A stretch of 64,000 nt of DNA. Origin: Macrostomum lignano. Taxonomy: Eukaryota. The position numbers were made by a program, and so were the translations under genes. Position 1 is the first letter of the stretch. The number at the start of each line of letters is the position of its first letter. This document shows, piece after piece, positions 11,261-64,000 of the stretch. A model generated the notes under the pieces. It ran no database searches, was not told where the DNA came from, and worked only from the letters and a program-made list of their open reading frames with translations. The DNA is taken from contig NIVC01001677.1 in the NCBI GenBank assembly GCA_002269645.1, positions 124,001 to 188,000 on the forward strand, in the 5' to 3' direction.

Positions 11261-11531
11261 TACACAGAAAGACAGACAGACAGACACATACACAGACAGA
11301 CAGACACATACAGACAGACAGACAGACAGACAGACAGTCAGACAGACAGACAGACAGACACAGACAGACACATACACAGAGAGACAGACAGACACATACA
11401 CAGAGAGACAGACAGACAGACACAGACAGACACATACACAGAGAGACAGACAGACAGACACATACACAGATAGACAGACAGACAGACAGACAGACATACA
11501 CAGAGAGACAGACAGACAGACAGACATACAC

Positions 11532-11568
<37 letters not shown>

Positions 11569-11571
11569 CAT

Positions 11572-11610
<39 letters not shown>

Positions 11611-14920: not shown

Positions 14921-15811
14921 AACTCCCTCGATTGTTAATCTAACTTCAACATTATTCTCACGGATGTTTATAGTGTTTATCGTTTTAGAACTAGCATTAT
15001 AGATGTTAATTAAACTTGTTTGCAAAGTTAACTTATTCATATATTAGAACACTATGCAATACTGATTTAATAGTCTTAATCAGTACGCTGACATGCAATC
15101 TCATTCTCCGCTCATTCTGTTACGCCGTCACTTTGCAGACGCCTCCAAACATAGCCTGGGAGGACAGGCGCACCCTGGACACAGACTGCAGAGCTTGGCT
15201 TGATGCCAAGCTGCAGGCTTGTATTGAAACCCTACCGCCTGAGTAAATATATTGTCATGCTTTTATTGTCAGAAACGCAACACCTGTAGCATAAATTAAC
15301 ATTCGATATAACCTCAATAATCCTTTTGCGCGCGTCTTTTTGCTTTCAATTTTAATTATTTTCCTAATAGAAATTAACCGGTTCAGTAGATAACAATCTT
15401 AACAATTAATTAACACCATAACTGATTTTATAATTTGCTTAGAATTTTAAGTTTATGCGTCAAACATCCTACTTGAATAAAATAATTAGTAGTGTAATCC
15501 GCAAATTAATTTATTTTACCTGGAAATTGTGTGTTTTGTATTGGTGGTTCTACCTACATATAGAAAAGAGAAGAGAGGTAGCTGAGATTCCAGCCAGAGC
15601 AAATATTAGCCGAGTATAAAATATGAGAAACTAATTCTACGAAAGAAAAGTACAAATTCAATTTGGAACTGTTGCCGTGCTTGTTAGCCTGAGTACACTC
15701 GGCTATGCGCTAAAACTACTCGACTCGATGGTTGAGTGTCTTAAGTGGGGCATTCGCTTCCTGAGCCAGGGGCTTTTGGATCTAGAAATTGGGAATATAA
15801 TATTCTTCAGC

Positions 15812-45800: not shown

Positions 45801-45944
45801 CATTGGGAGCTTCGCATTGGGACAGGCCAGGCCTCGGTAGAGAAGCTCGCTTGTAAATGTCTGAACGACGAGCGCCAACTGCCGGACTGAACTTTATATT
45901 TTATTACGGCAGTGGCCCAAGGCTCGATAAACCGATCAGATGTC

Positions 45945-46417
<473 letters not shown>

Positions 46418-47860
46418 TTCTACTGTCTGTGTGTTTACGTGGACTTTTTGGAAGTTCAGTAGCCTCGTTAGCTGGACCACCCGGTGTAGGTAGACCACTT
46501 AGGTGGACCACCAAATAATTTTGTCTCTGGTGGGGTTAAGACGTTGATGAGGATCTCAAATTAATGTCAGGCGGGTCAAGAAGGGCTCTAGCAATTTTGG
46601 AATGTCTAGCATGGTTTTTTCCAAAGTTATTCGCATTTCAGTTTAGCTGGACCTCCAGCCTGGTCTACCTAAACCGAGCGAGTCTGGTCCACGTAAACCG
46701 AAAAATTTCAGAAAATTTTTCGAAAATCGTCTGTTTGTGTCTGTTTGTGTCTGTTTGTGTATAGCAGTTATTAAGCATAGATTCGATGCAAAACTGAATT
46801 TTTTTACATATCATTACCTTACGAACAAATGGCTATGTTAACATCATATTATGACCGCCACTGGCCTTAAAACAATATGCGTTAAAATTCTTTGACATTC
46901 AAGTAGGTACGCAGGTTAATTTAAAATTCTGACAACCTCGTATGCGAAATGAATTTTATATAGTAAACTTTAAACTCCATTTAATTAGCTCAGTTCCAGC
47001 AATTCCGGTATCGTACTCTGAGCAGAGACTCACAGAGTAAGACACCAATGTAAAGAAATCCAATTTACTAACCAGATCAAGCGATAAAGACTCCGAGACA
47101 AGAAAGATATTTAAGTGAAGCTTAAACAATATTCTTCAATGACTTCTCAAGAACTCCCAGTGGTCCTTGATAGCCACACTGTGTAAATGAAAATTTCTGA
47201 GGCTCTACCATTACACAAGAAAAAATTAATAGCAACTTCATAAATTAAGTGCTTGCCAACTCTATCGCAAACACTATGGGATATCTTGAAGAAGAAGATC
47301 CTAAGCTGCAGCCTTTTAAGTGCAAAGTTGAAGATGCAATTTACCTAATTGAAAAGGGCCATTCATACATGTACATGCAAAATCAAGAGGACGCAATTAA
47401 GAAGGGCCTTTTAGCTAGAAATTGGGTCTCTGAATCTCTAGCAAAAGATCGACTTGATTGCGGTCCCAGTAAAACTAAGAACGCATTAACAGTCAGCCTA
47501 ACACTCACTGTCTGTTTGGTCCACGTAAACACATTTGCAGGATTATAGGGTTGGAACAGACAGACAGACAGACCTCCCTTTCTATAATTGGCTGGTTAAC
47601 ACTTAGGAGGAAAGATCAACCCCAACGATGGGACCGACCTCAGCCAATAGGAAACCCGCAAGGGTTCTGAAGGTAAGACTGTAGAGAGAGGGATATATAA
47701 TGTCTAAGCGGGTGGTCCCCGTAAACCATGGCGTAGTTAGACCACACACAGACAGTTTTATAAATTAGAACTGATTCTATTCACACTTATTAGGTCTAAC
47801 ATTATTTTCCATACTCTAAGTTTCATCTATAGATAAATTTATTGTGCCAAGCAAGATATA

Positions 47861-50800
47861 ATGACCCGAAAAAAAAACAAAAAGGACGCCAAGCCTAAGC
47901 CTAAGGTAAAACCTAAAAAAACTGCGACGCAAAAAGCCACTGCAAAATCGAAGAAGGCCGCATCGCCTGGTGAAAACCGACAGTCTGCTCGCAAAACCAT
48001 CGACACCGAGTCCAGAAAAGTGAGTTTCGTTTGATGATCTCAAAATAGCTAATTGCAAGGCCTATCTAACCTACAGACACAACTGAAGCAGCTCTCTCAG
48101 TCTGTTTGGGGCTTTGGCTCACAGAGCTGTCTTGAAAGTTTAGTGCAGGAATGCTTACGTTTCTTGGAATGCAATCAGAACAGATTCTTAGAAAGCGAGC
48201 TGGTCCACCATGAGATCAGAATGTCTGCACTGTGTAAATGAATGGTCTCTAGGCATTCCGACTCAGATTATCGCCTAGTAGTGCTGTAGAGAAGGTGGTC
48301 CACCTAACCTACAGACACAACTGAAGCAGCTCTCTCAGTCTGAGGGTCACACGGATACACTGCAGCGGTTTTGAATTTAAGCTTCCGACTTTGACTTGTC
48401 TTTTTATTCTCTAACTTCCTAGGAGCCTGAGGTCGAATTTCGTTCTCCTGAGCTCGACCAGTCTGACGCTTCGAAAAAGTTGAAATCGCGCTCTACGTCT
48501 GCATCACGCCTTGATGAAGGCGCTCAGTCGCACAACGCTACCGCGGATGCAGGCGCTACTCCAGCCTCGAAGAAGGCCGCATCGCCTGGTGAAAATCGTC
48601 GGTCTACTGGCAAATCCGTCGACACCGAGTCCAGAAAAGTGAGTTTCGCTTGATGATCTCAAAGTAGCTAGCTGCAACTCAATTGCTGTAGAGAAGCTGG
48701 TCCACCTAACCTACAGACACAACTGAAGCAGCTCTCTCAGTCTGTTTGGGGCTTTGAATCTTGGAAGGTGGTCCACCTAACCTACAGACACAACTGAAGC
48801 AGCTCTCTCAGTCTGTTTGGGGCTTTGACTTTTATAAGGTGGTCCACCTAACCTACAGACACAACTGATGCAGCTCTCTCAGTCTGTTTGGGGCCTTGGC
48901 TGTCAGAGCTGTCTTGAAAGTTTAGTGCGGGAATGTTTCCGTTTCTTGGAATGCAATCAGAACAGATTCTTAGAAAGCGAGCTGGTCCACCATGAGATCA
49001 GAATGTCTGCACTGTGTAAATGAATGGTCTCTAGGCATTCCGACTCAGATTATCGCCTAGTAGTGCTGTAGAGAAGGTGGTCCACCTAACCTACAAACAC
49101 AACTGGAGCAGCTCTCTCAGTCTGTTTGAGGGTCACACGTAGGGATGTCGACCCCGGGGAGTGCTCCCCGGGGCCCCGGGGAGCTTGTCGGGGAATATTC
49201 CCCGGGGAATTGAACCGGGGACCCCGGGGAGAAAAATGCATTTTTAACCTAATTTTTGCCATTAAAATAAGAAAATAATTCACAGAGAGCTGATTGAAAC
49301 TCTGTCTATGCTTTTCTTACCGCATAACTGCTTATCTCAATGTAAAATTTCAAACGCAACACACGTTTGAATGTTTTTTCACTACGAGTCCTTCAATCAA
49401 GCAAATTTCACCTAAAAACCCGTCAGGAAAAAGAAGCTTTACTGACTACTGTGTTGGTCTGCGTTGACGGCTTGACGGAATTTGACGCAGGCACAGCGCT
49501 GCGTCCTGCGGACGCATGGGGGTGTCATACAATAACAAAATGCTCCCTATTAGACAAGGACAATGTCTGCTAGAAATAAAAATTTTGATTATAAAAACAG
49601 TCTCATTCATTAATTATCCTCCCACGAGCGTAGCTGCTGAGCATGCATTTTCCGCCTCCACACCACAGTCTGGACTCCTTCTGACAAAGGTGCACGCACG
49701 ATTTGATGATGCCACGTTGTCAAATACAGTTTTAAATAAACACAAGCTCCCCGGGGTCGACATCCCTACTACAACCAAGGGATATAGGCATTTCTTAGGA
49801 GCCATTTAAATTTTAAAGTGATCTTATGCGAATTTTAATGTTAAAAGCTTCATGCTGTAACTAACTAATTTAGTAGGATTGCATTGTAATCAGTTATTCA
49901 TTAATTTTTCGCTATTTTTACAAACCATCCCACGTTGTCTTGACTCTTGATTTGCCATCTACTGTTATAACTGAGCCTGAAGACTTGTCTATACAGAGGA
50001 CAGTGTTTTGAATCTCTGGCTAAACTGTCTCTCCTCTCTGCGCCTCTCCACTCGCGGGTACAGAGAAGGCTATTAAAAAGTTATTCCAAAACACTGTACA
50101 TTCGCTATGTACATTAAGCCCAATCGCCTGACCCTTCGTCTGGGGGTCTGGGCTGGTGGAATGAGTGAGCGGCACAAACAACAGAAAAAGCAGACAAACT
50201 TCACATGCTTACAGTTTCTGTCCTGATTGAGATACAGAGTTGAGACTTTACATTTAGATAGAGAATGAGTCAATAAAGAATTGCGTCAAATTTGAAGTCA
50301 ATCGCTTCACGTGGAGCAAGCTTATGACAGCCGAAAGTTAGTCATTTTAAACCTATTTACACTCCTTTGCCCAGATCGGGAAAGAGAGGCAGGCGGGCGG
50401 AGGTTGGGGTGGTTGCCTCGCTGAAAAAACAGTTAATTTTAAAGTGCACAGCGCCTTTCAGGATTAACTTTGAGACTTGAAATTTTACACGGTTGAAAGG
50501 ATCGGTAGAAGTGGAGCGGCGCTATGGAGGATTTAGTAAAAAATCGCGCATTTTGAGCAGTTTTTGCACTTTTAGGTAGGAAGACTTGAGTTTAGGAAAT
50601 TTTAAGGTAGCCTAAGACATTCTCCGTAGTAAATTTAGGGCGGGTGCAAAAGTTATCGTAATTTGGTTGAGCGGTTTGGGACTTGGGAGTCCATAGCAAA
50701 GTAATTTGTACACAGACACACACGCAGACAGAGTTTTCATTTTTATAGGTAGAGATTGTTTAGTTTTTACCCTTGCGCCTTGAACATGTAGTCTAAAGCT

Positions 50801-53800
50801 AAAATCAAAGTTTAAAATGCCATTTAAGATCTAAGCCAAAGTTATTCGCCGTTTTTAACTTATTTTTAATTTTCCCCGGGGTCCCCGGGAATGACAGTAA
50901 ATTCCCCGGGTCCCCGATAAGAATATTCCCCGGGGAATCGACATCCCTAGTCACACGGATACACGGCAGCGGTTTTGAATTTAAGCTTCCGACGTTGACT
51001 TGTCTTTTTATTCTCTAACATCCTAGGAGCCTGAGTTCGAATTTCATTCTCCTGAGCTCGACCAGTCTGACGCTTCGAAAAAGTCGAAATCGCGCTCTGC
51101 GTCTGCATCACGCCTTGATGAAGGCTCTCAGTTGCACAACGCTACCGCGGATGCAGGCGCTACTCCAGCCTCGAAGAAGGCCGCATCGCCTGGTGAAAAT
51201 CGTCGGTCTACTCGCAAATACGTCGACACCGAGTCCAGAAAAGTGAGTTTCGCTTGATGATCTCAAAGTAGCTAGCTGCAACTCAATTGCTGTAGAGAAG
51301 CTCTTAAAAGGTGGTCCACCTAACCTACAGACACAACTGAAGCAGCTCTCTCAGTCTGTTTGGGGCTTTGACTCTTATAAGGTGGTCCACCTAACCTACA
51401 GACACAACTGAAGCAGCTTTCTCAGTCTGTTTGGGGCTTTGACTCTTGGAAGGTGGTCCACCTAACCTACAGACACAACTGAAGCAGCTCTCTCAGTCTG
51501 TTTGGGGCTTTGACTTTTATAAGGTGGTCCACCTAACCTACAGACACAACTGATGCAGCTCTCTCAGTCTGTTTGGGGCCTTGGCTGTCAGAGCTGTCTT
51601 GAAAGTTTAGTGCGGGAATGTTTCCGTTTCTTGGAATGCAATCAGAACAGATTCTTAGAAAGCGAGCTGGTCCACCATGAGATCAGAATGTCTGCACTGT
51701 GTAAATGAATGGTCTCTAGGCATTCCGACTCAGATTATCGCCTAGTAGTGCTGTAGAGAAGGTGGTCCACCTAACCTACAGACACAACTGAAGCAGCTCT
51801 CTCAGTCTGTTTGAGGGTCACACGGATACACTGCAGCGGTTTTGAATTTAAGCTTCCGACGTTGACTTGTCTTTTTATTCTCTAACTTCCTAGGAGCCCG
51901 AGGTCGAATTTCGTTCTCCTGAGCTCGACCAGTCTGAGGCTTCGAAAAAGTTGAAATCGCGCTCTGCGTCTGCATCACGCCTTGATGAAGGCGCTCAGTC
52001 GCACAACGCTACCGCGGATGCAAGCGCTACTCCAGCCTCGAAGAAGGCCGCATCGCCTGGTGAAAATCGTCGGTCTACTGGCAAATCCGTCGACACCGAG
52101 TCCAGAAAAGTGAGTTTCGCTTGATGATCTCAAAGTAGCTAGCTGCAACTCAATTGCTGTAGAGAAGCTGGTCCACCTAACCTACAGACACAACTGAAGC
52201 AGCTCTCTCAGTCTGTTTGGGGCTTTGAATCTTGGAAGGTGGTCCACCTAACCTACAGACACATCTGAAGCAGCTTTCTCAGTCTGTTTGGGGCTTTGAC
52301 TCTTGGAAGGTGGTCCACCTAACCTACAGACACAACTGAAGCAGCTCTCTCAGTCTGTTTGGGGCTTTGACTTTTATAAGGTGGTCCACCTAACCTACAG
52401 ACACAACTGAAGCAGCTCTCTCAGTCTGTTTGGGGCTTTGACTCTTAAAAAGTGGTCCACCTAACCTACAGACACAACTGAAGCAGCTCTCTCAGTCTGT
52501 TTGGGGCTTTGACTCTTGGAAGGTGGTCCACCTAACCTACAGACACAACTGAAGCAGCTCTCTCAGTCTGTTTGGGGCTTTGACTCTTAGAAGGTGGTCC
52601 ACCTAACCTACAGTCAAAACTTATGTACTGTTTAGGCGTTTCCGTAATGGAGTAATATGTGAGAAATTTTTTTTTATTTTAGTTTCTACAGGGCTGTTTG
52701 GTCGAGCAGTTTACATTGGATTCTCTTCGAGGGAAGCGAGTTTTTTTTCTGTACGGCGAAAGTCAAAAGCGACAAAAGAAGCTGGAATCTGCCGTCGTCT
52801 ATTATGGCGGAAGCGTTGCTTCGTTTTTTTCAAATGAGGTGTGTAGTTTTTGCAATGCATTCGTTGTTTTTGTTTGTTGCTTGTTAATAGGGCAGATTAG
52901 AGACGTTGATAGATTTTTTGTAGCTATGGGCTCGTATTTTTTGCTTTTCCAGGTTGATTTAATCATCGCTGACGATTCCGCTGTCTCCATTGAAGCTAAA
53001 CAATCTTTTTCGGAGTTTTCTAGGGGTTTCACCATGCAGCAGAGAGCCGTTACGCAAACTTCGAGTTCGCAATGCAGAATTGTCAAAACATTCGAAGATA
53101 TTTTGACGAAAGCTCGCTTGCTGCAAATACCTGTCTACACTCCGGCAATATTTCGAGATCGAATTCGCGATCAAGTTTCTCAACACGAGCTGTGCCAGAA
53201 AACTATTTCTTCAGGGAGGTTTGCCGAAGAAGATCGGAATTTGACCCCACCGGCCGTTGTTGTTACGGATGCCCAGCATTTGCTGAGACCAATCTTCAAA
53301 GATAACATTGATGTCGTCGACATTTTTGCAAACCCAAGGGCTAATAATAACGATGAAAAAAATCGTCAAAAGCCTGACGGCAAAGAAAAACGGAAAGGTC
53401 GGTGTGAAAACTGTCGCGAAGCCTACGACGACTTTAATCAGCACATAACATTAAGCCAAAAGCACCAAGATTTCGTTTCGAATAAAAAAAATTTTTACTG
53501 AAATCGACCAAATCATTTCAACTCTTCCGACGCTAGACAGCGCCCTAAATGAAGCGACTCAAAAGGCTACCGCTCCTATGACACATCATGACACGAAAAA
53601 ACCGGATTCGAAAGCACTACCTAACATATTTCAGCAAAATGACGGTGATAGACGCCAAGCCGCATCGCTTGGCGAAAATCGTCAGTCTGCTCGCAAATAC
53701 GTCGACACCGAGTCCAAAAAAGTGAGTTTCGTTTAATGATCTCAAAATAGCTAGCTGCATGCAACTCAATTGCTGTAGAGAAGTTCTTAAAAGGTGGTCC

Positions 53801-56800
53801 ACCTAACCTACAGACACAACTGAAGCAGCTCTCTCAGTCTGTTTGGGGCTTTGACTTTTATAAGGTGGTCCACCTAACCTACAGACACAACTGAAGCAGC
53901 TCTCTCAGTCTGTTTGGGGCTTTGACTCTTAAAAGGTGGTCCACCTAACCTACAGGCACAACTAAAGCAGCTCTCTCAGTCTGTTTGAGGGTCACACGGA
54001 TACACGGCAGCGGTTTTGAATTTAAGCTTCCGACTTTGACTTGTCTTTTTATTCTCTAATTTCCTAGGAGCCTGAGGTCGAATTTCGTTCCCGCCAAATC
54101 GAACGCACTGGTGCCTCAAAAAGAGGGCGGAAATCGCGAAGCCGTTCGCGCTCTGCATCACGCCTTGATGAAGGCGCTCAGTCGCACAACGCTACCGCGG
54201 ATGCAGGCGCTACTCCAGCCTCGAAGAAGGCCGCATCGCCTGGTGAAAATCGTCGGTCTACTGGCAAATCCGTCGACACCGAGTCCAGAAAAGTGAGTTT
54301 CGCTTGATGATCTCAAAGTAGCTAGCTGCAACTCAATTGCTGTAGAGAAGCTGGTCCACCTAACCTACAGACACAACTGAAGCAGCTCTCTCAGTCTGTT
54401 TGGGGCTTTGACTCTTGGAAGGTGGTCCACCTAACCTACAGACACAACTGAAGCAGCTCTCTCAGTCTGTTTGGGGCTTTAACTCTTAAAAGGTGGTCAA
54501 CCTAACCTACAGACACAACTGAAGCAGCTCTCTCAGTCTGTTTGGGGCTTTGACTTTTATAAGGTGGTCCACCTAACCTACAGACACAACTGAAGCAGCT
54601 CTCTCAGTCTGTTTGGGGCTTTGACTTTTATAAGGTGGTCCACCTAACCTACAGACACAACTGAAGCAGCTCTCTCAGTCTGTTTGGGGCTTTGACTTTT
54701 ATAAGGTGTCCACCTAACCTACAGACACAACTGAAGCAGCTCTCTCAGTCTGTTTGGGGCTTTGACTCTTGGAAGGTGGTCCACCTAACCTACAGACACA
54801 ACTGAAGCAGCTCTCTCAGTCTGTTTGGGGCCTTGGCTGTCAGAGCTGTCTTGAAAGTTTAGTGCGGGAATGTTTCCGTTTCTTGGAATGCAATCAGAAC
54901 AGATTCTTAGAAAGCGAGCTGGTCCACCATGAGATCAGAATGTCTGCACTGTGTAAATGAATGGTCTCTAGGCATTCCGACTCAGATTATCGCCTAGTAG
55001 TGCTGTAGAGAAGGTGGTCCACCTAACCTACAGACACAACTGAAGCAGCTCTCTCAGTCTGTTTGAGGGTCACACGGATACACGGCAGCGGTTTTGAATT
55101 TAAGCTTCCGACTTTGACTTGTCTTTTTATTCTCTAACTTCCTAGGAGCCTGAGGTCGAATTTCGTTCCCGCCAAATCGAACGCACTGGTGCCTCAAAAA
55201 GAGGGCGGAAATCGCGAAGCCGTTCGCGCTCTGCATCACGCCTTGATGAAGGCGCTCAGTCGCACAACGCTACCGCGGATGCAGGCGCTACTCCAGCCTC
55301 GAAGAAGGCCGCATCGCCTGGTGAAAATCGTCGGTCAACTGTCAAATCCGTCGACACCGAGTCCAGAAAAGTGAGTTTCGCTTGATGATCTCAAAGTAGC
55401 TAGCTGCAACTCAATTGCTGTAGAGAAGCTGGTCCACCTAACCTACAGACATCAACTGAAGCAGCTCTCTCAGTCTGTTTGGGGCTTTGACTTTTATAAG
55501 GTGGTCCACCTAACCTACAGAAACAACTGAAGCAGCTCTCTCAGTCTGTTTGGGGCTTTGACTTTTATAAGGTGGTCCACCTAACCTACAGACACAACTG
55601 AAGCAGCTTTCTCAGTCTGTTTGGGGCTTTGACTTTTATAAGGTGGTCCACCTAACCTACAGACACAACTGAAGCAGCTCTCTCAGTCTGTTTGGGGCTT
55701 TGACTTTTATAAGGTGGTCCACCTAACCTACAGACACAACTGAAGCAGCTCTCTCAGTCTGTTTGAGGGTCACACGGATACACGGCAGCGGTTTTGAATT
55801 TAAGCTTCCGACTTTGACTTGTCTTTTTATTCTCTAACTTCCTAGGAGCCTGAGGTCGAATTTCGTTCCCGCCAAATCGAACGCACTGGTGCCTCAAAAA
55901 GAGGGCGGAAATCGCGAAGCCGTTCGCGCTCTGCATCACGCCTTGATGAAGGCGCTCAGTCGCACAACGCTACCGCGGATGCAGGCGCTACTCCAGCCTC
56001 GAAGAAGGCCGCATCGCCTGGTGAAAATCGTCGGTCTACTGGCAAATCCGTGGACACCGAGTCCAGAAAAGTGAGTTTCGCTTGATGATCTCAAAGTAGC
56101 TAGCTGCAACTCAATTGCTGTAGAGAAGCTGGTCCACCTAACCTACAGACACAACTGAAGCAGCTCTCTCAGTCTGTTTGGGGCTTTGACTTTTATAAGG
56201 TGGTCCACCTAACCTACAGACACAACTGAAGCAGCTCTCTCAGTCTGTTTGGGGCTTTGACTTTTATAAGGTGGTCCACCTAACCTACAGACACAACTGA
56301 AGCAGCTCTCTCAGTCTGTTTGGGGCTTTGGCTCTCAGAGCTGTCTTGAAAGTTTAGTGCGGGAATGTTTCCGTTTCTTGGAATGCAATCAGAACAGATT
56401 CTTAGAAAGCGAGCTGGTCCACCATGAGATCAGAACGTCTGCACTGTGTAAATGAATGGTCTCAAGGCATTCCGACTCAGATTATCGCCTAGTAGTGCTG
56501 TAGAGAAGGTGGTCCACCTAACCTACAGACACAACTGAAGCAGCTCTCTCAGTCTGTTTGGGGCTTTGACTCTTAAAAGGTGGTCCACCTAACCTACAGA
56601 CATCAACTGAAGCAGCTCTCTCAGTCTGTTTGGGGCTTTGACTCTTAAAAGGTGGTCAACCTAACCTACAGACACAACTGAAGCAGCTCTCTCAGTCTGT
56701 TTGGGGCTTTGACTTTTATAAGGTGGTCCACCTAACCTACAGACACAACTGAAGCAGCTCTCTCAGTCTGTTTGGGGCTTTGACTTTTATAAGGTGGTCC

Positions 56801-59800
56801 ACCTAACCTACAGACACAACTGAAGCAGCTCTCTCAGTCTGTTTGAGGGTCACACGGATACACGGCAGCGGTTTTGAATTTAAGCTTCCGACTTTGACTT
56901 GTCTTTTTATTCTCTAACTTCCTAGGAGCCTGAGGTCGAATTTCGTTCCCGCCAAATCGAACGCACTGGTGCCTCAAAAAGAGGGCGGAAATCGCGAAGC
57001 CGTTCGCGCTCTGCATCACGCCTTGATGAAGGCGCTCAGTCGCACAACGCTACGCGGATGCAGGCGCTACTCCAGCCTCGAAGAAGGCCGCATCGCCTGG
57101 TGAAAATCGTCGGTCTACTGGCAAATCCGTGGACACCGAGTCCAGAAAAGTGAGTTTCGCTTGATGATCTCAAAGTAGCTAGCTGCAACTCAATTGCTGT
57201 AGAGAAGCTGGTCCACCTAACCTACAGACACAACTGAAGCAGCTCTCTCAGTCTGTTTGGGGCTTTGACTTTTATAAGGTGGTCCACCTAACCTACAGAC
57301 ACAACTGAAGCAGCTCTCTCAGTCTGTTTGGGGCTTTGACTTTTATAAGGTGGTCCACCTAACCTACAGACACAACTGAAGCAGCTCTCTCAGTCTGTTT
57401 GGGGCTTTGGCTCTCAGAGCTGTCTTGAAAGTTTAGTGCGGGAATGTTTCCGTTTCTTGGAATGCAATCAGAACAGATTCTTAGAAAGCGAGCTGGTCCA
57501 CCATGAGATCAGAACGTCTGCACTGTGTAAATGAATGGTCTCAAGGCATTCCGACTCAGATTATCGCCTAGTAGTGCTGTAGAGAAGGTGGTCCACCTAA
57601 CCTACAGACACAACTGAAGCAGCTCTCTCAGTCTGTTTGGGGCTTTGACTCTTAAAAGGTGGTCCACCTAACCTACAGACATCAACTGAAGCAGCTCTCT
57701 CAGTCTGTTTGGGGCTTTGACTCTTAAAAGGTGGTCAACCTAACCTACAGACACAACTGAAGCAGCTCTCTCAGTCTGTTTGGGGCTTTGACTTTTATAA
57801 GGTGGTCCACCTAACCTACAGACACAACTGAAGCAGCTCTCTCAGTCTGTTTGGGGCTTTGACTTTTATAAGGTGGTCCACCTAACCTACAGACACAACT
57901 GAAGCAGCTCTCTCAGTCTGTTTGAGGGTCACACGGATACACGGCAGCGGTTTTGAATTTAAGCTTCCGACTTTGACTTGTCTTTTTATTCTCTAACTTC
58001 CTAGGAGCCTGAGGTCGAATTTCGTTCCCGCCAAATCGAACGCACTGGTGCCTCAAAAAGAGGGCGGAAATCGCGAAGCCGTTCGCGCTCTGCATCACGC
58101 CTTGATGAAGGCGCTCAGTCGCACAACGCTACCGCGGATGCAGGCGCTACTCCAGCCTCGAAGAAGGCCGCATCGCCTGGTGAAAATCGTCGGTCTACTG
58201 GCAAATCCGTCGACACCGAGTCCAGAAAAGTGAGTTTCGCTTGATGATCTCAAAGTAGCTAGCTGCAACTCAATTGCTGTAGAGAAGCTGGTCCACCTAA
58301 CCTACAGACACAACTGAAGCAGCTCTCTCAGTCTGTTTGGGGCTTTGACTCTTAAAAGGTGGTCCACCTAACCTACAGACACAACTGAAGCAGCTCTCTC
58401 AGTCTGTTTGGGGCTTTAACTCTTAAAAGGTGGTCAACCTAACCTACAGACACAACTGAAGCAGCTCTCTCAGTCTGTTTGGGGCTTTGACTTTTATAAG
58501 GTGGTCCACCTAACCTACAGACACAACTGAAGCAGCTCTCTCAGTCTGTTTGGGGCTTTGACTCTTGGAAGGTGGTCCACCTAACCTACAGACACAACTA
58601 AAGCAGCTCTCTCAGTCTGTTTGGGGCTTTGGCTCTCAGAGCTGTCTTGAAAGTTTAGTGCGGGAATGTTTCCGTTTCTTGGAATGCAATCAGAACAGAT
58701 TTTTAGAAAGCGAGCTGGTCCACCATGAGATCAGAACGTCTGCACTGTGTAAATGAATGGTCTCAAGGCATTCCGACTCAGATTATCGCCTAGTAGTGCT
58801 GTAGAGAAGGTGGTCCACCTAACCTACAGACACAACTGAAGCAGCTCTCTCAGTCTGTTTGGGGCTTTGACTCTTGGAAGGTGGTCCACCTAACCTACAG
58901 ACACAACTGAAGCAGCTCTCTCAGTCTGTTTGGGGCTTTGGCTCTCAGAGCTGTCTTGAAAGTTTAGTGCGGGAATGTTTCCGTTTCTTGGAATGCAATC
59001 AGAACAGATTCTTAGAAAGCGAGCTGGTCCACCATGAGATCAGAACGTCTGCACTGTCTAAATGAAGGGTGTCTAAACGTTTTGACTTAGATTATCGCGT
59101 TGTAGTGCTTCAGAGAATTGACTTATTGACTTTTCAGGAAAAATGAGCTAATGAGTATATCTAAGCTATGTAACTTGCTGTTTATTTTTCAGGTTTGCGA
59201 TAGAGACGGCGATGCTACCAAAGCAAGGATAGACGTTGCTTTCGATTTAGTAGATGATGATTCGTTTGTGGACAAAAATCTTACGGTAGTAGACGATATT
59301 CTTGGTGGAAGGTTGCACTCAGCTTTAAGGGACATTGCAAATACGAGTATACTACCTGAGGACGCTGAACTCGAGGAAGAAGATGGTGATGAAGATTATT
59401 ATTTGGAGGAAGTCTGGTCTGATGATTTAGTTCCGTCCCAAGCGAAACTTAAGCATGAGAAGAAGAGGCATTGCTGCCTCTTTTGCGGAGAAATGTTTTC
59501 GAAGATCAGAAGGCATCCTATTCGGGCACACTCGAAGGAAATGTGTGTACAGCGCGCCCTCGCATTTAATCCTAAGTCTGATAGTAAGTTTTTGAAATAA
59601 GTTTTTTATGTAGGTCCTCATAGTAGTATTTAGTTTGTCTGAAAATAATTATCTGTTCATATTTTTTTCAGAATATGACCAGGAATTTGATCGCTTGCGC
59701 TTTCGAGGAGATTACGAACATAACATAAAAGTTATGACCCAGGAGAAGGAGGGAGGAATCATTGTGTGTCGCGAAAGAAGTTCTTCGGACATGAAAGATA

Positions 59801-62136
59801 ATGAAGTTTCGTATTTGCCGTGCATTCACTGTTTTGGATTTTTTCGTAAAACTGAGTTAAGCAGGCATGTTCAGCGCTGCCGCTTTGTCGTAAATGTCAG
59901 CGATTTGAACAGGCGCACAGAAGCTGTCAGTGCAGGACGCTGCCTTCTCCTTGCATCATGCTTTCCGGCGAAATATCCGTCCAAATTTATTGAACTTATT
60001 AATAAAATGAAGGTAGACTCATGTAGCAAAGTAGCTCAATCAGACAAGCTTATAATGGAACTTGGCTACTACGCCTATGAAGGTTTTACATCCGGAAAGA
60101 CAGGAAAGAAAATTGTAACTGCGAAAATGCGTGAAATGTCGAGATTACTTATGTCAGCTCGTGAAATTATGGGCGATCCCAGCGCTTGTCTTGACGATTT
60201 GCTGAAGCCATCATCATTTGATTTAGTTGTTGAGGCGACTCGAAATGTAGCGAAATTTACGGCCCAAGAAGATGCTCAGATTTGCGATTCTTTTTCTATT
60301 CCTTCGATGGCACTTAAGTGCGGGTTTTCTCTGAAGCTGGCTGCTGAACTGTCGTTAGTACGTGCCGTGAAATGCGAAATGCCCGAAGTAGCTCAGGAGC
60401 GACGCAACTTCATCACTCTGTATGAAACATCATGGAGCCGTAAAATATCTTCGATTGCACTTTTGTCCTTGAAAGAAAGAAAAATTGACAAGGGTCAGAC
60501 ATTGCCGTTAACTAGCGACATTCAGTTAATCACGAAGCACATTAACGAATATTTAAGCCACATCGACACGGAAAAGCTAAAAAGCAGCCCTTCTTACTGG
60601 AAAGAGGTGGCCGAATATGTTGCGATTCGTTTGTCTATTTTCAACAAGCGCCGGGCGTCTGAGCCCTTCAAGCTGCGAGTTTCGGCGTGGCAGAAAGCAA
60701 GATCATGCAAAGATGTTGATGATACAACATTATCTGCGCTAAGTGAATTAGAAAAGCAAATGCTTTACCGGTTGACTATCGTTAATGTTCGAGGTAAGAG
60801 AGCACAGCGACCGGTTCCTCTGCTAGTTTCGAATGAGATTGCTGAAATTATCGATGAGCTCATTCGCACAAGACACCACGCTTCAAGTCCTTACGTATTC
60901 TGCAGTAGTGGAAGTTTGGGATATATATCCCCATTCGTTGCGCGCACAAATGTTGTCTCCAGTTGTCAAGGGCTCCAGTTCCCTGCTCGTCTATCTTCGA
61001 CCAACCTTCGAAAATACATTGCCACTGTCTCTCAGATCCTTGAAATGAGAGAAAATGAGCTCGGATGGCTCTCCAACCATCTTGGACATAGCCTTAATGT
61101 TCACCATAATTTCTATCGATTGCATGAAAACACTATTGAGCTTGCTAAAGTAGGCAAGCTACTTCTGGCTATCGAGGCCGGTAGATTCGACCAGCTTAAA
61201 GGCAAAACTATCGAAGAGATTGATGTTAACGACATCGAAATTGACTATGACATTGACGATAAGTCAGATGCAAAAAAAGATGATTTGAACGAATCCGGTG
61301 ATGTGGAAGCCTCAATAGGCTCACAGGCTCGAGAATTAAAACGTGGTGACCAAAAGAGTCAAGCACCTCCTGAGAATAATGGAGCTCGTATCCAAGCTAA
61401 GGAATTTGAGGACGAGTCAATTTATCACGAAGGTTCTGTCGACTTTCGCGGAGCCCCCCTGTCCATCAAGCAAGTCGAAAAAAAGAAGAATCGATTAGCT
61501 GTGCTCGACTCAGATGAATATGAAAGCGAAGTAGACAAAGACGATTCAGACTACCAACCGACGAAAAAAACCAGAAAAGTGCAGAAAGCTAGAGCAAACG
61601 AAAGGCGGATTCGAAGGACGACTAAGCCAAAGGGTGCGACAGCAACAACGACTAATAACAAAAGCGAGCCAGGACATGGACAAGAGGACCCACAGAAGGA
61701 CAAAAGCGAGCCAGGACCCGGACAAGAGGACCCACAGAAGGACAAAAGCGAGCCAGGACCCGGACAAGAGGACCCACAGAAGGACAAAAGCGAGCCAGGA
61801 CCCGGACAAGAGGACCCACAGAAGGACAAAAGCGCTCCTAGTTCGGAAGGTAAGGACAAAATGGGAACTGGGGGGAAGAAAAAAACCAAAGTTGATTTCA
61901 GTTACTTCAATCCATTTCAGAAGTCAAGAAAAAAACTAATTCAGGAGCACATTGCGTGGAACAAAGACGAAAATGAGGCAATTAACCGCGCGATAGAAAA
62001 GATCGAAGACGGCAAAGTACCTGGTTTTGCAGCCCTTGGAGAGCTAAAAGCACGCGAACCTGCACTCCAGTCACGATCGATCCATAAAATAAAAACGAAG
62101 TTTTTCAATGAAATGAAAAAACGCGGCATTTTGTGA
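47861..62136 (+). CDS. Predicted 13-exon H1-like/repeat/DBF4-like/tyrosine recombinase fusion gene, ~1900 aa, with two 1-nt frameshifts as assembled
   Basis: Exons 47861-48019, 48423-48638, 51027-51242, 51894-52109, 52683-52838, 52953-53721, 54068-54292, 55146-55370, 55846-56070, 56926-57149, 58005-58229, 59193-59583, 59672-62136. All have AG/GT boundaries; all junctions are phase 0 except the last (phase 1, compatible). There is +1 nt at ~53482-53496 and -1 nt at ~57052. Confidence 0.65.
49140..50949 (+). mobile_element. Non-autonomous hAT element (1810 bp) inserted in an intron of the YR gene
   Basis: TIRs TAGGGATGTCGA and TCGACATCCCTA; perfect TSD GTCACACG (49132-49139, 50950-50957), which is single in sister repeat units; CCCCGGGG subterminal repeats; hAT dimerization remnant YPPTSVAAEHAFSAS..GLLLTKVHARFDDATLS near 49610-49720. 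Confidence 0.93.
50260..50756 (-). mobile_element. Possible non-autonomous Helitron-like 5' fragment inside the hAT cargo
   Basis: The minus strand begins A|TCTCTACCTATAAAAATGAAAACTCTGTCTGCGTGTGTGTCTG, a TC start followed by a GTCT-like tract as in many invertebrate Helitron-like elements. No CTAG 3' end was found. Confidence 0.3.
52683..53721 (+). CDS. DBF4: DBF4-like exons (motif N/BRCT, motif M, zf-DBF motif C)
   Basis: After removing the in-frame intron 52839-52952: LRGKRVFF..KLESAVVYYGGSVASFFSNE|VDLIIAD..ILTKARLLQIPVY (N); LTPPAVVVTDAQHLLRPIFKD (M); KGRCENCREAYDDFNQHITLSQKHQDFVSN, continuing (+1 frame) as EIDQII (C). Confidence 0.85.
59193..62136 (+). CDS. Tyrosine recombinase exons with Cys/His N-terminal motifs, acidic linker, 14-aa repeat and Myb/SANT-like tail
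   Basis: CLFCGEMFSKIRRH and YLPCIHCFGFF..LSRHVQRC precede catalytic-type motifs FNKRRASE (R), VRGKR (K), STNLRKYIAT (R) and LGHSLNVHHNFYR (H,Y). KSEPGPGQEDPQKD occurs about 4 times (42 bp). C-terminus is WNKDENEAI..GKVPG..EPALQSRSIHKIK. Confidence 0.88.
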
Positions 62137-62229
62137 CTAAACGCTTTATGATTGCTAACACTAAGATTAAAAAGCATCTATTAGTTTAGCTGACAAGAAA
62201 TACCTGTTCACTATCGATAGCATAGCGAT

Positions 62230-62320
62230 GGCTTTTGGGGGCGGTCCAAGTTTGGGACGCCAAAATGAGTATGAGGGGCGCCAATTTTTAAGCTGGGGGT
62301 GCAAAAAACGTGTAGGGGGG
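62230..62320 (-). mobile_element. Fragment of the same MITE family as 27741-28048, inverted
   Basis: GGGGGCGGTCCAAGTTTGGG..GAGTATGAGGGGCGCCAATTTTTAAGCTGGGGG is the reverse complement of ~27950-28020, with substitutions. Confidence 0.75.
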
Positions 62321-62329
62321 GGAATGCGA

Positions 62330-63190
62330 GTCGCCGTTTTAAAAATGCTTCAATTTCTTGTATCTGTTTGATACAATTTCCATTTTAATAACTGTCGCCG
62401 TTTTAAAAATGCTTCAATTTCTTGTATCTGTTTGATACAATTTCCATTTTAATAACTGTCGCCGTTTTAAAAATGCTTCAATTTCTTGTATCTGTTTGAT
62501 ACAATTTCCATTTTAATAACTGTCGCCGTTTTAAAAATGCTTCAATTTCTTGTATCTGTTTGATACAATTTCCATTTTAATAACTGTCGCCGTTTTAAAA
62601 ATGCTTCAATTTCTTGTATCTGTTTGATACAATTTCCATTTTAATAACTGTCGCCGTTTTAAAAATGCTTCAATTTCTTGTATCTGTTTGATACAATTTC
62701 CATTTTAATAACTGTCGCCGTTTTAAAAATGCTTCAATTTCTTGTATCTGTTTGATACAATTTCCATTTTAATAACTGTCGCCGTTTTAAAAATGCTTCA
62801 ATTTCTTGTATCTGTTTGATACAATTTCCATTTTAATAACTGTCGCCGTTTTAAAAATGCTTCAATTTCTTGTATCTGTTTGATACAATTTCCATTTTAA
62901 TAACTGTCGCCGTTTTAAAAATGCTTCAATTTCTTGTATCTGTTTGATACAATTTCCATTTTAATAACTGTCGCCGTTTTAAAAATGCTTCAATTTCTTG
63001 TATCTGTTTGATACAATTTCCATTTTAATAACTGTCGCCGTTTTAAAAATGCTTCAATTTCTTGTATCTGTTTGATACAATTTCCATTTTAATAACTGTC
63101 GCCGTTTTAAAAATGCTTCAATTTCTTGTATCTGTTTGATACAATTTCCATTTTAATAACTGTTGCCCTTTTAAAAATGCTTCAACTTCT
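62330..63190. repeat. 64-bp AT-rich tandem array, about 13 near-identical copies
   Basis: Unit GTCGCCGTTTTAAAAATGCTTCAATTTCTTGTATCTGTTTGATACAATTTCCATTTTAATAACT; one or two diverged copies at ~63350-63440. Confidence 0.97.
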
Positions 63191-63873
63191 TGTACTCCCT
63201 ATGACTTTTTTAACTAATGCAATCCTAAGTTTGTTAAACGTGTAGTTTAAGAATGTACTTCCGGACTTAAATTAGTTTCAATGACTTTGCAGTTAGTTTA
63301 ATTAGGTTTAAATCTTTTGCGTTAAGGCAAGCGAAATGATGCGGTATTTATTTTCAAAATGCTTCAATTTCTTATATCTGTTTGATACAATTTCCATTTT
63401 AATAACTGTTGCCGTTTTAAAAATGCTTCAACTTCTTGTATCCCTGAGTGTGCGTTGTTTTTCTTTCGTAACTAATGCAGTTTAACCCATAGTTTAGTAA
63501 AGCTAAATAAATTCGTTTGAACCAGGGTTTTTTTAATAAAATGGAATCGTAAACCTTTTTTATCTTCTGTTTCTTGAGAATTTCTGTTTTAATTAGCCCA
63601 AAATAACAGTTTGAAACTCATAAATTTTCTACAAAGAAAGAGGTCTAACTAAACCAACTGTTTTTTTGCGGTCCACCTAACCCGGTCCCCAAAACGTAGT
63701 TAGTGAACCGCCACAGTTTCCACGAACTGGCTATTCCGTCAAGTTAACAAAAAGATAACCCTAGCTAGCCTTTCGCGTTGTCAAAACAGACTCTATTTTT
63801 TAACCGGAATTGCGTGGTCCACGTAACGCATTAACATAACTCAGGTCCCGCTAAACACACAGACAGTCGTAAG

Positions 63874-63875
63874 AG

Positions 63876-63932
<57 letters not shown>

Positions 63933-63933
63933 T

Positions 63934-64000
<67 letters not shown>
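63874..64000. repeat. (GTCT)n microsatellite, right flank of the YR element
   Basis: AGTG then a GTCT run to the window end, same orientation as the left flank. Confidence 0.98.

What the first reader, a model, noticed from the sequence alone, without database searches (positions are those of the whole stretch)
47861..58229. Hidden array of symmetric exons building a tunable basic, phosphosite-rich N-terminus
Seen: what looks like satellite DNA contains eight copies of an exon bounded by TTC/ATCCTAG acceptors and AAAA|GTGAGT donors. Three are 216 nt (EPEVEFRSPELDQSDASKK..) before the DBF4 exons. Five are 225 nt (EPEVEFRSRQIERTGASKRGRKSRSRSRSAS..) after them; one of these has a 1-nt deletion. 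All share GATPASKKAASPGENRRSTGKSVDTESRK or close variants. Exon 1 is H1-like (MTRKKNKKDAKPKPKVKPKKTATQKATAKSKKAASP). All are phase 0-0, so any subset can be skipped. Inference: a disordered DNA/chromatin-binding tail with repeated S/T-P sites, possibly regulated by CDK or the fused DDK module, with length set by unequal crossover or splicing.
Basis: partly seen in the sequence, partly recalled or inferred. Interest (0 to 1): 0.7.

Follow-up and report, generated by a model that had tools for sequence, protein, structure and literature searches.

The report
Repeated exons inside a flatworm transposon gene
The "satellite" hides real, in-frame repeated exons, but they form the disordered front half of the recombinase gene of a young 17.5-kb mobile element in the flatworm Macrostomum lignano, which also carries a captured DBF4 module and inserts into (TGTC)n microsatellites.

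Summary
Exon 1 (159 nt), three 216-nt exons, two DBF4 exons and five 225-nt exons (one is 224 nt) are all phase 0-0, with CCTAG acceptors and AAAA|GTGAGT donors. RNA-seq-derived database proteins use the DBF4-to-225-nt, 225-to-225 and 225-to-recombinase junctions.

The context changes the reading. The array is the 5' half of the single gene of a 17,460-bp Crypton-like, probably tyrosine-recombinase, transposon (window 46416-63875). The genome (Macrostomum lignano) holds eight near-identical copies at unrelated loci, each inside a (TGTC)n microsatellite. Two related loci are empty sites.

The number and order of repeat exons differ between copies (3+5, 4+4, 4+4, and 4+2 five times) while point divergence is almost nil, so the array rearranges quickly.

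I found no sign of selection on the repeat peptide (pN/pS about 1; intron flanks as conserved as exons) and no full CDK-consensus sites. "Tunable phospho-tail" is therefore untested. A tolerated, drifting, basic disordered spacer or tail is more likely.

The window's own copy is broken, with +1 in DBF4 exon B and -1 in one 225-nt exon. The intron satellites carry the element's subterminal motif TGGTCCACSTAA.

The parts
45941..46415 (.). Left flanking compound (TGTC)n microsatellite, the target DNA and not part of the element
   Evidence: The same array is continuous at the empty sites on C63 and C576.
46416..63875 (+). Whole mobile element, 17,460 bp, Crypton-like, with a single multi-exon gene
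   Evidence: Ends are identical in the copies where they could be read (left end 7 copies, right end 7 copies). Flanks are unrelated between copies. Empty sites exist. Coordinates.
46499..46510 (-). Left subterminal copy of the motif TGGTCCACSTAA, inverted relative to the right end
   Evidence: All 55 motif copies in the window lie inside the element, against 0.04 expected.
47861..48019 (+). Exon 1, 159 nt, with the ATG. Lys-rich (net +15). Its last 63 nt are 89% identical to the tail of the repeat exons.
48423..48638 (+). 216-nt repeat exon, variant v1, phase 0-0
49140..50949 (.). Nested 1,810-bp TIR element in intron 2. TIRs are TAGGGATGTCGA..CCCCGGGG and there is an 8-bp direct duplication GTCACACG (hAT-like).
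   Evidence: A long intron 2 of 2.4-4.5 kb is present in all eight copies.
51027..51242 (+). 216-nt repeat exon, variant v2
51894..52109 (+). 216-nt repeat exon, variant v3
52692..52838 (+). DBF4 exon A, 147 nt, BRCT-like motif N
   Evidence: Pfam BRCT E=7.7e-4, just below the cut-off.
52953..53721 (+). DBF4 exon B (motif M plus the zf-DBF motif C). It is 769 nt here, a +1 frameshift in the A8T5 run at about 53485-53497. Its last 63 nt are the repeat-exon tail.
   Evidence: (zf-DBF E=4.4e-16)
54068..54292 (+). 225-nt repeat exon (v4)
55146..55370 (+). 225-nt repeat exon (v5)
55846..56070 (+). 225-nt repeat exon (v6)
56926..57149 (+). 225-type repeat exon with a 1-nt deletion (224 nt, v7)
58005..58229 (+). 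225-nt repeat exon (v4), the last of the array
48020..59192 (+). Introns of the array, filled with 1-8 copies each of an element-private 71-bp satellite that carries GGTGGTCCACCTAAC. This span also contains the exons and the nested TIR element listed above.
   Evidence: The listed genomic matches to the satellite all lie in the eight copies, plus one small contig (more matches were not listed).
59193..59583 (+). Recombinase-part exon 1 (acidic stretch plus the first Cys/His finger), phase 0 to 1
   Evidence: The junction TESRK|VCDRDGD is present in P0002.
59672..62139 (+). Recombinase-part exon 2: second finger, putative tyrosine-recombinase core, acidic tail, 4 x 14-aa repeat and a possibly SANT/Myb-like C-terminus (by eye, untested). 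It contains a 71-nt optional intron at 61850-61920.
62330..63194 (.). 64-bp tandem array (13.5 units) in the 3' non-coding part. Unit number varies between copies.
63815..63826 (+). Right subterminal copy of TGGTCCACGTAA, 50 nt from the right end
   Evidence: It is conserved in the sister family.
63876..64000 (.). Right flanking (TGTC)n microsatellite (target DNA)

Best explanation
Region 47861-58229 is the 5' half of the single, 13-exon gene of a young mobile element of Macrostomum lignano. The element is about 15-17.5 kb long and Crypton-like, and its gene encodes a probable tyrosine recombinase.

How the array is built. The gene front is made of tandem cassettes. Each cassette runs: the last 63 nt of an exon, a GTGAGT donor, an intron made of 71-bp satellite units, a CCTAG acceptor, then the first roughly 150 nt of the next exon. 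Each cassette therefore yields one phase-0 exon of 216 or 225 nt.

What it encodes. The exons are spliced into the mRNA and encode a low-complexity, S/T/K/R-rich, probably disordered segment. Two such arrays flank a captured DBF4 core (BRCT-like N motif, M motif, zf-DBF C motif) and lead into zinc fingers and the recombinase.

Why exon number varies. The cassettes are long, near-identical direct repeats. Unequal homologous exchange or slippage adds, removes and shuffles exons much faster than point mutation, and phase 0-0 keeps every product in frame.

Likely role (inferred, not shown). The peptide acts as a flexible basic tail or spacer, supplying NLS-like basic clusters and non-specific DNA or chromatin affinity around the DBF4 docking module. 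Its length drifts within tolerated limits and is not tuned.

Shown: the exons, the 225-type junctions, the copy-to-copy variation, and the mobile-element context.
For: Exons and frames are.

Spliced reading frames:
- One copy (C2070) gives an uninterrupted spliced ORF of 1,897 aa with this exon model.
- Two others (C89, C3100) give 1,726 aa once the C-terminal 71-nt intron is removed.

Transcript evidence:
- P0002 (PAA93368.1) joins the DBF4-exon-B tail, four 225-nt exons in the genomic order of its locus C29, and the recombinase exon.
- P0013 joins DBF4 exon A, exon B and one 225-nt exon.
- The GenBank models of this assembly derive from RNA-seq assemblies (StringTie/TACO/TransDecoder; PMC5730564).

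Mobile-element context:
- Eight copies are 100% identical over the 509-aa recombinase query.
- Their flanks are unrelated and their ends are identical, inside (TGTC)n.
- Two empty sites differ from the filled locus by about 17.5-17.7 kb.

Array variation:
- Exon patterns are 3+5, 4+4, 4+4 and 4+2 (five copies), with hybrid exon variants and a 225-type exon placed ahead of the DBF4 exons.
- The recombinase exon has only 3 substitution sites in 2,465 nt across 7 copies.

Cassette boundaries: exon 1 and DBF4 exon B end in the same 63-nt tail at 87-89% identity.

The DBF4 evidence is.

Sister family (55% identity; locus C850, protein P0003). It has a chromodomain in place of DBF4, its own unrelated 387-nt phase-0 repeat exons, 83-85-bp intron satellites and (TGTC)n flanks.
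Against: - The three 216-nt exons and exon 1 have no transcript or protein model in the data I could reach. Their use rests on identical splice signals and the continuous frame.
- No purifying selection on the repeat peptide is detectable. There are 14 nonsynonymous against 5 synonymous variable sites. The proximal intron flanks (85 nt upstream, 59 nt downstream) vary as little as the exons or less.
- The +1 frame of the 225-nt exons is also open, so openness alone proves little.
- Five of eight copies, including this window's, carry 1-nt indels in coding sequence. These may be PacBio homopolymer errors or real decay.
- The tyrosine-recombinase assignment is not backed by any Pfam hit. The fold match is weak: XerA, E=0.095, probability 0.92.
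Confidence: 0.78

Rival explanations
1. One reading: the array is an adaptive, tunable, phospho-regulated chromatin-binding tail. Its length is set by regulated exon skipping or selected copy number, and CDK or the fused DBF4-recruited Cdc7 phosphorylates it.
For: - All upstream exons are phase 0-0.
- Each repeat has 2-3 [ST]P sites and 1-2 [ST][DE] dipeptides (S/T followed by an acidic residue), which by my own knowledge is a DDK-preferred context, next to a DBF4 module.
- In the sister family, the transcript-derived model P0003 omits one of the two 387-nt repeat exons present at its own locus.
- Two families independently evolved repeat-exon arrays in the same position.
Against: - There is no [ST]Px[KR] site.
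- pN/pS is about 1.
- P0002 includes all four 225-nt exons of its locus.
- The five B-type copies all have the same 4+2 layout.
- The apparent exon skip in P0003 could be a short-read assembler artefact in a repeat.
Confidence: 0.12
2. Exon-number changes are made by the element's own recombinase acting on internal pseudo-sites, not by homologous unequal exchange. The 71-bp intron satellite is an array of the element's subterminal binding motif.
For: - TGGTCCACSTAA occurs 55 times in the window, all inside the element. One copy lies near each end in inverted orientation, two lie upstream of the ATG, and 51 lie in the intron satellites.
- The right-end motif is conserved in the 55% sister family, whose intron satellite carries a related GGGTCCAGCTAA.
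- Crypton recombinases mediate inversions and translocations between target-like sites in Chlamydomonas (PMC9977147).
Against: - Binding of the protein to this motif is not shown.
- Long, near-identical direct repeats are sufficient for homologous unequal exchange.
- The presumed crossover core at the element ends is TGT(C), not this motif.
Confidence: 0.15
3. The repeat units are not translated as part of the recombinase. They would be 5'-UTR or pseudo-exons, with the functional protein starting in or after the DBF4 exons.
For: - The deposited models start internally: P0002 at a Met in DBF4 exon B, and P0001 in the last intron.
- No selection signal is seen on the repeats.
- Frameshifts lie in the front half of several copies.
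Against: - The internal start of P0002 follows a 1-nt deletion in its locus (DBF4 exon B is 767 nt).
- Three copies keep 1,726-1,897 codons open from the exon-1 ATG.
- The 216- and 225-nt types differ by a 9-nt length change that preserves frame, with no stops.
- The DBF4 exons are in phase with both arrays.
Confidence: 0.07
4. The differences in exon count between copies are assembly artefacts of a repeat-rich PacBio assembly, and the true copies are uniform.
For: - The assembly is described as difficult and redundant (PMC5730564).
- 1-nt indels are as frequent as substitutions in coding sequence: 3 against 3 in 2,465 nt. That ratio suggests consensus errors.
Against: - Five independent loci give the same 4+2 layout with near-identical intron lengths, so the assembler reproduces the array consistently.
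- The A-type copies differ by whole cassettes carrying diagnostic exon variants, not by ragged collapses.
Confidence: 0.1

Closest known systems
Crypton DNA transposons (Goodwin 2003; Kojima & Jurka 2011, PMC3212892; active CryptonF-1_cRei, PMC9977147)
   Same: - A single intron-containing gene for a recombinase with R..K..R..H..Y invariant residues.
- No reverse transcriptase and no long terminal repeats.
- Insertion without a target-site duplication, at a short sequence shared by the element end and the target (here TGT/TGTC).
- Clean empty sites.
   Different: - It is very large (15-17.5 kb).
- It is found only inside one microsatellite, (TGTC)n.
- It has subterminal inverted motif copies.
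- It has a captured DBF4 core and repeat-exon arrays in the N-terminal half.
- It has no Pfam Phage_integrase or DUF3504 match.
- The HxxR histidine is replaced by an invariant threonine.
Tandem symmetric exon arrays in repetitive or disordered proteins (for example titin PEVK and nebulin repeats; from my own knowledge)
   Same: - Same-length exons that are multiples of 3 and in the same phase.
- Near-identical splice sites.
- Copy number changes by unequal exchange.
- Any subset can be skipped and the product stays in frame.
   Different: - The array sits in a transposon gene.
- It varies between paralogous element copies within one genome.
- Its introns are themselves satellites that carry the element's terminal motif.
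- No regulated alternative splicing has been shown.
Chromatin-targeting modules on mobile-element integrases (chromodomain of chromoviruses/Tf1; from my own knowledge). Within this recombinase family: chromodomain (P0003), SET (13 of 34 homologues scanned), BRCT and ATF7IP_BD.
   Same: An N-terminal module fused to the recombinase that could tether it to chromatin or to replication factors.
   Different: The module is a DBF4 core (the Cdc7 activator and MCM/Rad53-docking protein). I found no paper linking DBF4 to a tyrosine-recombinase element. Its function here is untested.
Cellular DBF4/Dfp1/ASK
   Same: - zf-DBF CCHH finger: Pfam E=4.4e-16; aligns to yeast Dbf4 (7pt6) and human DBF4 (4f99).
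- A motif-M region 40% identical to the host DBF4-like gene (C723, C889, C948).
- A BRCT-like N motif.
   Different: - It is only about 305 aa.
- It is embedded in a transposon protein between repeat arrays.
- It has diverged from the host gene (40% identity over 123 aa).

Membership tests
Crypton (tyrosine-recombinase DNA transposon) | Encodes a tyrosine recombinase (R-H-R-Y catalytic residues, integrase fold) | tested here: inconclusive
   - Invariant R327, K375, T443-x-L-R446, H472, H477 and Y481 across 11 homologues. The same RRxGE / GKRGR / LRK / GHxxxxHxxYYR blocks appear in 34 more.
- No Pfam Phage_integrase or DUF3504 hit, and no PDB sequence hit.
- The first fold search found nothing.
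- In the fold search on the domain-only model, the top three hits are the archaeal XerA recombinase, but weakly (E=0.095, probability 0.92, TM 0.28).
Crypton (tyrosine-recombinase DNA transposon) | Multicopy, with defined ends, no LTRs or long TIRs, and a short sequence shared between terminus and target; no target-site duplication | tested here: met
   - Eight copies with identical ends.
- Unrelated flanks.
- Empty site ...CTTAG|TGTCTGTC... against filled site ...CTTAG|TGTTCTAC...AAGAG|TGTCTGTC....
Crypton (tyrosine-recombinase DNA transposon) | No reverse transcriptase or other transposition gene (this separates it from DIRS, Ngaro and PAT) | tested here: met
   Within 46416-63875 the only long reading frames are the exons of this one gene. 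The nested TIR element has no long ORF. The small ORFs were not searched against Pfam.
DBF4 (Cdc7 regulatory subunit) | Motif C: DBF4-type CCHH zinc finger | tested here: met
   - Pfam zf-DBF E=4.4e-16, 59 bits against a cut-off of 24.8.
- Aligns to yeast Dbf4 655-700 and human DBF4, with the C-x2-C...H...H ligands kept.
DBF4 (Cdc7 regulatory subunit) | Motif M (Cdc7-binding) upstream of motif C | tested here: met
   40% identity, E=1.7e-12, over residues 137-259 to the host DBF4-like ORFs on C723, C889 and C948. This is similarity to a paralogue only.
DBF4 (Cdc7 regulatory subunit) | Motif N (BRCT-like) | tested here: inconclusive
   Pfam BRCT E=7.7e-4, 20.1 bits against a cut-off of 21.3. 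There is a weak alignment to the yeast Dbf4 BRCT region.
DBF4 (Cdc7 regulatory subunit) | Binds and activates Cdc7 kinase | not testable with these tools
   Needs pull-down and kinase assays.
Tandem symmetric exon array | Repeated exons of equal length (a multiple of 3), same phase, conserved splice sites, used in mRNA | tested here: met
   The 225-type junctions are present in P0002 and P0013. The 216-type junctions are inferred only.
Tandem symmetric exon array | Copy-number variation by unequal exchange | tested here: met
   Patterns of 3+5, 4+4, 4+4 and five copies of 4+2, with hybrid variants (v13 is the v3 head joined to the v2 tail).
Tandem symmetric exon array | Regulated alternative inclusion of the exons | not testable with these tools
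   No reads were available. P0002 includes all four exons. Only the sister-family model P0003 omits one.
   No such hit for exon 1 plus the repeats. The resemblance is Lys/Ala/Pro composition only.
RS domain (SR proteins) | Long run dominated by Arg-Ser dipeptides | tested here: not met
   Only a 12-residue RKSRSRSRSASR stretch per 225-nt exon, and none in the 216-nt type.

The most novel reading that the evidence does not exclude
A recently active family of microsatellite-targeting Crypton-like transposons whose recombinase has captured the Cdc7-activator core of DBF4, with sister families carrying chromo or SET modules. In this family the intron satellites of the N-terminal exon array would be functional arrays of the recombinase's own binding motif. 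Recombinase binding inside its own gene would then either autoregulate expression or splicing, or catalyse the rapid gain and loss of symmetric exons. The DBF4 module would couple transposition to replication-origin firing.
Probability: 0.12. Interest if true: 0.8.

Novelty: new variant of a known kind. Interest (0 to 1): 0.55.

Why it matters
- Active or very young Cryptons are rare. The first direct observation of activity dates from 2023 (PMC9977147). Animal Cryptons were described as lacking recognisable termini or targets (PMC3212892).
- This family has exact ends, empty sites and a single microsatellite target. That makes its mechanism directly testable in a transgenesis-capable model flatworm.
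- A DBF4 core on a transposon recombinase suggests a new way to tie DNA transposition to replication licensing. I found no published example of this.
- For genome annotation, it shows that satellite-looking DNA can hide a long spliced coding region, and that repeat masking removed most copies from the deposited gene set.
- For protein evolution, it gives a within-genome series of exon-array variants produced faster than point mutations.

Tried and rejected
- **Haplotigs or homeologues as the source of the eight copies.** Rejected: the flanks beyond the (TGTC)n arrays share nothing.
- **Host gene.** Rejected: empty sites exist on C63 and C576.
- **Exon-versus-intron conservation as a coding test.** Uninformative: whole cassettes are homogenised. 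The 85 nt upstream and 59 nt downstream of each exon vary no more than the exon does. The three singleton 1-nt indels fall in exons and none in the proximal introns, but the numbers are tiny. pN/pS is about 1.
- **The high divergence of the 5' non-coding block.** It turned out to come from one copy: C89 holds 44 of the 53 variable sites.
- **Pfam on the recombinase part and on 11 homologues.** No integrase family was found. The one DUF3504 hit among distant homologues lies in a different region of a fused model.
- **PDB profile search.** Nothing relevant.
- **Fold search.** The whole 509-aa model gave nothing. The domain-only model gave weak XerA hits.
- **Exact look-up of the predicted full-length proteins** (1,726 and 1,820 aa). 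Not in the collection. The look-up of encoding contigs for P0002 had no record.
- **Homology between the repeat peptides of the two families.** None, BLASTP E=8.7, so the arrays arose independently.
- **Literature searches** for Crypton plus Macrostomum, DBF4 plus tyrosine recombinase, and Crypton plus SET domain. Nothing specific turned up.

Full report

Yes.

- The donor AAAAGTGAGT occurs ten times in the 64-kb window. All ten are on the + strand between 48016 and 58226, against 0.22 expected.
- Eight CCTAG|GAGCC acceptors pair with these donors. They give three 216-nt and five 225-nt units, the fourth of which is 224 nt.
- Between the two groups lie two exons (52692-52838 and 52953-53721). 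They encode a DBF4 core, with Pfam zf-DBF at E=4.4e-16 and BRCT at E=7.7e-4.
- All introns in front of the recombinase part are phase 0.
It is 768 nt in six of the eight genomic copies and 767 nt in one. The extra base sits in an A8T5 run and gives an immediate stop, so this window's copy is interrupted as assembled.

**2. What the array belongs to.**

- After the last 225-nt exon, an intron leads to 59193-59583 and then 59672-62139, in frame.
- This part has two Cys/His fingers and a conserved core. Across 11 and then 34 homologues the core keeps invariant RRxxE, GKR, TxLRK and GHxxxxHxxxYR blocks.
- That is the residue pattern of a tyrosine recombinase, except that Thr replaces the His of HxxR.
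- Pfam and PDB sequence searches find no integrase family.
- An AlphaFold model of the whole region matched nothing.
- For a domain-only model (mean pLDDT 69), the three best PDB matches were the XerA tyrosine recombinase, but weakly (E=0.095, probability 0.92).
- I therefore call it a probable tyrosine recombinase.
- The family is very large, with 15,472 representative clusters at E<=0.001.
- Its members often carry N-terminal chromatin-type modules. SET occurs in 13 of 34 scanned, and chromo, BRCT and ATF7IP_BD also occur.

**3. It is a mobile element.**

- Homologue names identify the organism as Macrostomum lignano.
- Its genome holds eight copies that are 100% identical over the 509-aa recombinase query. 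All eight carry the DBF4 exons and the repeat exons.
- Outside a (TGTC)n array on each side, the flanks of the copies share nothing.
- The ends are identical: (TGTC)n|TGTTCTACTGTCTGTGTG... and ...CAGACAGTCGTAAGAG|(TGTC)n. In the window the element is 46416-63875, 17,460 bp.
- Two related loci (C63, C576) contain both flanks of the window's copy at 97-99% identity. They are separated by about 1.1 and 0.8 kb, against 18.5 kb in the window's contig.
- On C63 the junction reads ...GTCTTAG|TGTCTGTC... in the empty site. The filled site reads ...GTCTTAG|TGTTCTAC...GTCGTAAGAG|TGTCTGTC....
- There is no duplication beyond a shared TGT.
- This fits the Crypton model: recombination between a short sequence at the element end and a near-identical target (PMC3212892; PMC9977147).
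- No other long ORF lies in the element.

**4. Are the repeat units used as exons?**

- The GenBank gene set of this assembly comes from RNA-seq-guided assemblies (StringTie, TACO, mapped de novo transcripts) with TransDecoder ORFs. Models overlapping annotated repeats were removed (PMC5730564).
- One surviving model, P0002 (PAA93368.1; locus C29), reads as follows: the tail of DBF4 exon B, then four 225-nt exons in the order of that locus (first ...STRKYVD..., then three ...STGKSVD...), then VCDRDGD..., the recombinase exon.
- Its start at an internal Met follows a 1-nt deletion in that copy's DBF4 exon B.
- P0013 and P0166, UniProt entries whose gene-model source I did not verify, join DBF4 exon A, exon B and one 225-nt exon with the intact frame.
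- With the same splice model, copy C2070 gives one open frame of 1,897 aa.
- Copies C89 and C3100 give 1,726 aa once a 71-nt C-terminal intron, seen spliced in P0001, is removed.
- I found no model covering exon 1 or the 216-nt exons. Their use is inferred from the identical splice signals and the continuous frame.

**5. How the array is built and how it changes.**

- The last 63 nt of exon 1 and of DBF4 exon B are 87-89% identical to the tail of the repeat exons. The first 30 intron bases are 90-97% identical.
- The repeating cassette is therefore exon tail, intron, exon head.
- The 216- and 225-nt types are almost identical apart from an internal stretch near the 5' end, and their overall lengths differ by 9 nt, which preserves the frame.
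- Introns hold 1-14 copies of a 71-bp satellite. The listed genomic matches to this satellite all lie in the eight copies, plus one small contig (more matches were not listed).
- Layouts differ across the eight copies:
  - The window's copy is E1-216-216-216-DBF4-225x5.
  - C29 and C2070 are 4+4, with different exon variants.
  - Five copies are E1-225-216-216-216-DBF4-225-225, including a hybrid exon (v13).
- Point divergence is minimal, with 3 substitution sites in 2,465 nt of recombinase exon across seven copies.
- The arrays therefore rearrange much faster than bases change, as expected for unequal exchange between long direct repeats.

**6. Is the peptide under selection, and is it "tunable"?**

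- Within each exon type there are 14 nonsynonymous and 5 synonymous variable sites, giving pN/pS of about 1.
- The intron stretches next to the exons are as invariant as the exons.
- The three singleton 1-nt indels among 54 repeat exons fall in exons, with none in the proximal introns.
But decay of individual transposon copies, or PacBio homopolymer errors, would give the same result.
- Composition is as follows:
  - 7-8% hydrophobic residues and 24% S+T.
  - Net charge +15 for exon 1, +1 for the 216 type and +8 for the 225 type.
  - 2-3 [ST]P sites and 1-2 [ST][DE] dipeptides per exon, and no [ST]Px[KR] site.
- There is no linker-histone domain.
- The peptide looks like a tolerated disordered basic spacer or tail with NLS-like clusters.
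- Regulation by CDK or DDK and regulated exon skipping remain untested.

**7. Independent support from a sister family.**

- A 55%-identical family (P0003; three copies; locus C850) has (TGTC)n on both sides and chromodomain exons in place of DBF4.
- It has two 387-nt phase-0 repeat exons plus a partial third, and introns filled with an 83-85-bp satellite.
- Its repeat peptide is unrelated to ours, so exon arrays arose twice in the same position.
- P0003 omits one of the two repeat exons present at its own locus. This is either true skipping or a short-read assembly artefact.

**8. An unexpected link between satellite and termini.**

- The motif TGGTCCACSTAA occurs 55 times in the window against 0.04 expected, and only inside the element:
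  - once near the left end, inverted;
  - once 50 nt from the right end;
  - twice upstream of the ATG;
  - 51 times in the intron satellites.
- The right-end copy (TGGTCCACNTAACGCATT) is conserved in the sister family, whose satellite carries a related GGGTCCAGCTAA.
- The satellites may therefore be arrays of the recombinase's binding motif. That offers a second route to exon gain and loss, or a means of autoregulation. This is a hypothesis only.

**9. The DBF4 module.**

- The finger aligns with yeast Dbf4 (7pt6) and human DBF4 (4f99), with the zinc ligands kept.
- The region covering motifs M and C is 40% identical to a host DBF4-like gene present at three loci.
- Capture from a cellular DBF4 is inferred.
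- From established knowledge, motifs M and C bind and activate Cdc7, and the BRCT region docks on Rad53 and the MCM complex. The module could tether the recombinase to replication origins or recruit Cdc7.
- I found no paper linking DBF4 to such elements.

**10. Verdict.**

The claims about H1 likeness, phospho-regulation and tuning are unsupported.
- The larger result is the context: a very young, microsatellite-targeting, Crypton-like element with a captured DBF4 core.
- This is a new variant of a known kind, of moderate interest.

Noticed in passing
window 46416-63875; loci L001-L028; empty sites L033, L034: The element inserts only within (TGTC)n microsatellites. All eight copies, and the sister family on C850, are flanked by (TGTC)n on both sides. 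Two related loci are clean empty sites, and no target-site duplication exists beyond a shared TGT.
   Followed up: yes
window 46499-46510 (-), 46685, 47517, 48296-58893 (51 copies), 63815-63826: The motif TGGTCCACSTAA occurs 55 times and is confined to the element. It lies at both subtermini in inverted orientation and once in most 71-bp intron satellite units. It may be the recombinase binding site.
   Followed up: partly
window 49140-50949: A nested 1,810-bp non-autonomous TIR element sits in intron 2. Its TIRs are TAGGGATGTCGA..CCCCGGGG and it has an 8-bp duplication GTCACACG (hAT-like). Intron 2 is long in all eight copies, and C89 has about 2 kb more there.
   Followed up: partly
window 61850-61920: A 71-nt intron lies near the 3' end of the gene. 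Copies with an A7 run after it (C1677, C29, C2070, C1122) need the intron retained to keep the C-terminal domain in frame. Copies with A6 (C416, C89, C3100, C2773) need it spliced.
   Followed up: partly
window 62330-63194: A 64-bp tandem array (13.5 units) lies in the 3' non-coding part of the element. The other copies lack 1, 2 or 9 units.
   Followed up: partly
window 61658-61834: A 42-bp in-frame coding repeat gives four copies of KSEPGPGQEDPQKD in the recombinase C-terminal region.
   Followed up: no
L010/L024 (copy C89), first ~1,050 nt of the element: The left about 1 kb of copy C89 carries 44 private substitutions (about 4%), while the rest of that copy is near-identical to the others. 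This suggests recombination with a diverged relative.
   Followed up: partly
L029+L030 (G000:C850:272001-290000), element about 6397-15179 in the joined locus coordinates: The sister element is about 8.8 kb. It has chromodomain exons, 387-nt repeat exons and an 83-85-bp intron satellite. The deposited protein P0003 omits one repeat exon present at its own locus.
   Followed up: partly
L031 (G000:C723:117027-118649), also C889 and C948: A host DBF4-like gene with a 541-aa Ala-rich exon carries motif M and a zf-DBF-like finger (by eye and by 40% identity to the element's module). It is the likely kind of source for the element's DBF4 module. Weaker DBF4/BRCT-like hits lie on C585, C586, C1484, C2852, C158, C3744 and C385.
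   Followed up: no
L032 (G000:C507:9200-11872) and six similar loci: A third family, 31% identical, has a single 891-aa ORF with the same fingers and recombinase core but no DBF4, chromodomain or repeat exons. It has seven copies and no (TGTC)n in the 10 kb fetched.
   Followed up: no
window 2592-4847 (+), 33922-35199 (-), 40648-42399 (-): Long ORFs lie in the flanking host DNA. By eye only, one looks like a class-C GPCR-type receptor, one has a C-type-lectin-like extracellular part, and one is a Thr/Pro-rich mucin-like membrane protein. The window also has large TGTC, TATC and other simple-repeat tracts at 9.9-12.8 kb and 18.6-22.3 kb.
   Followed up: no
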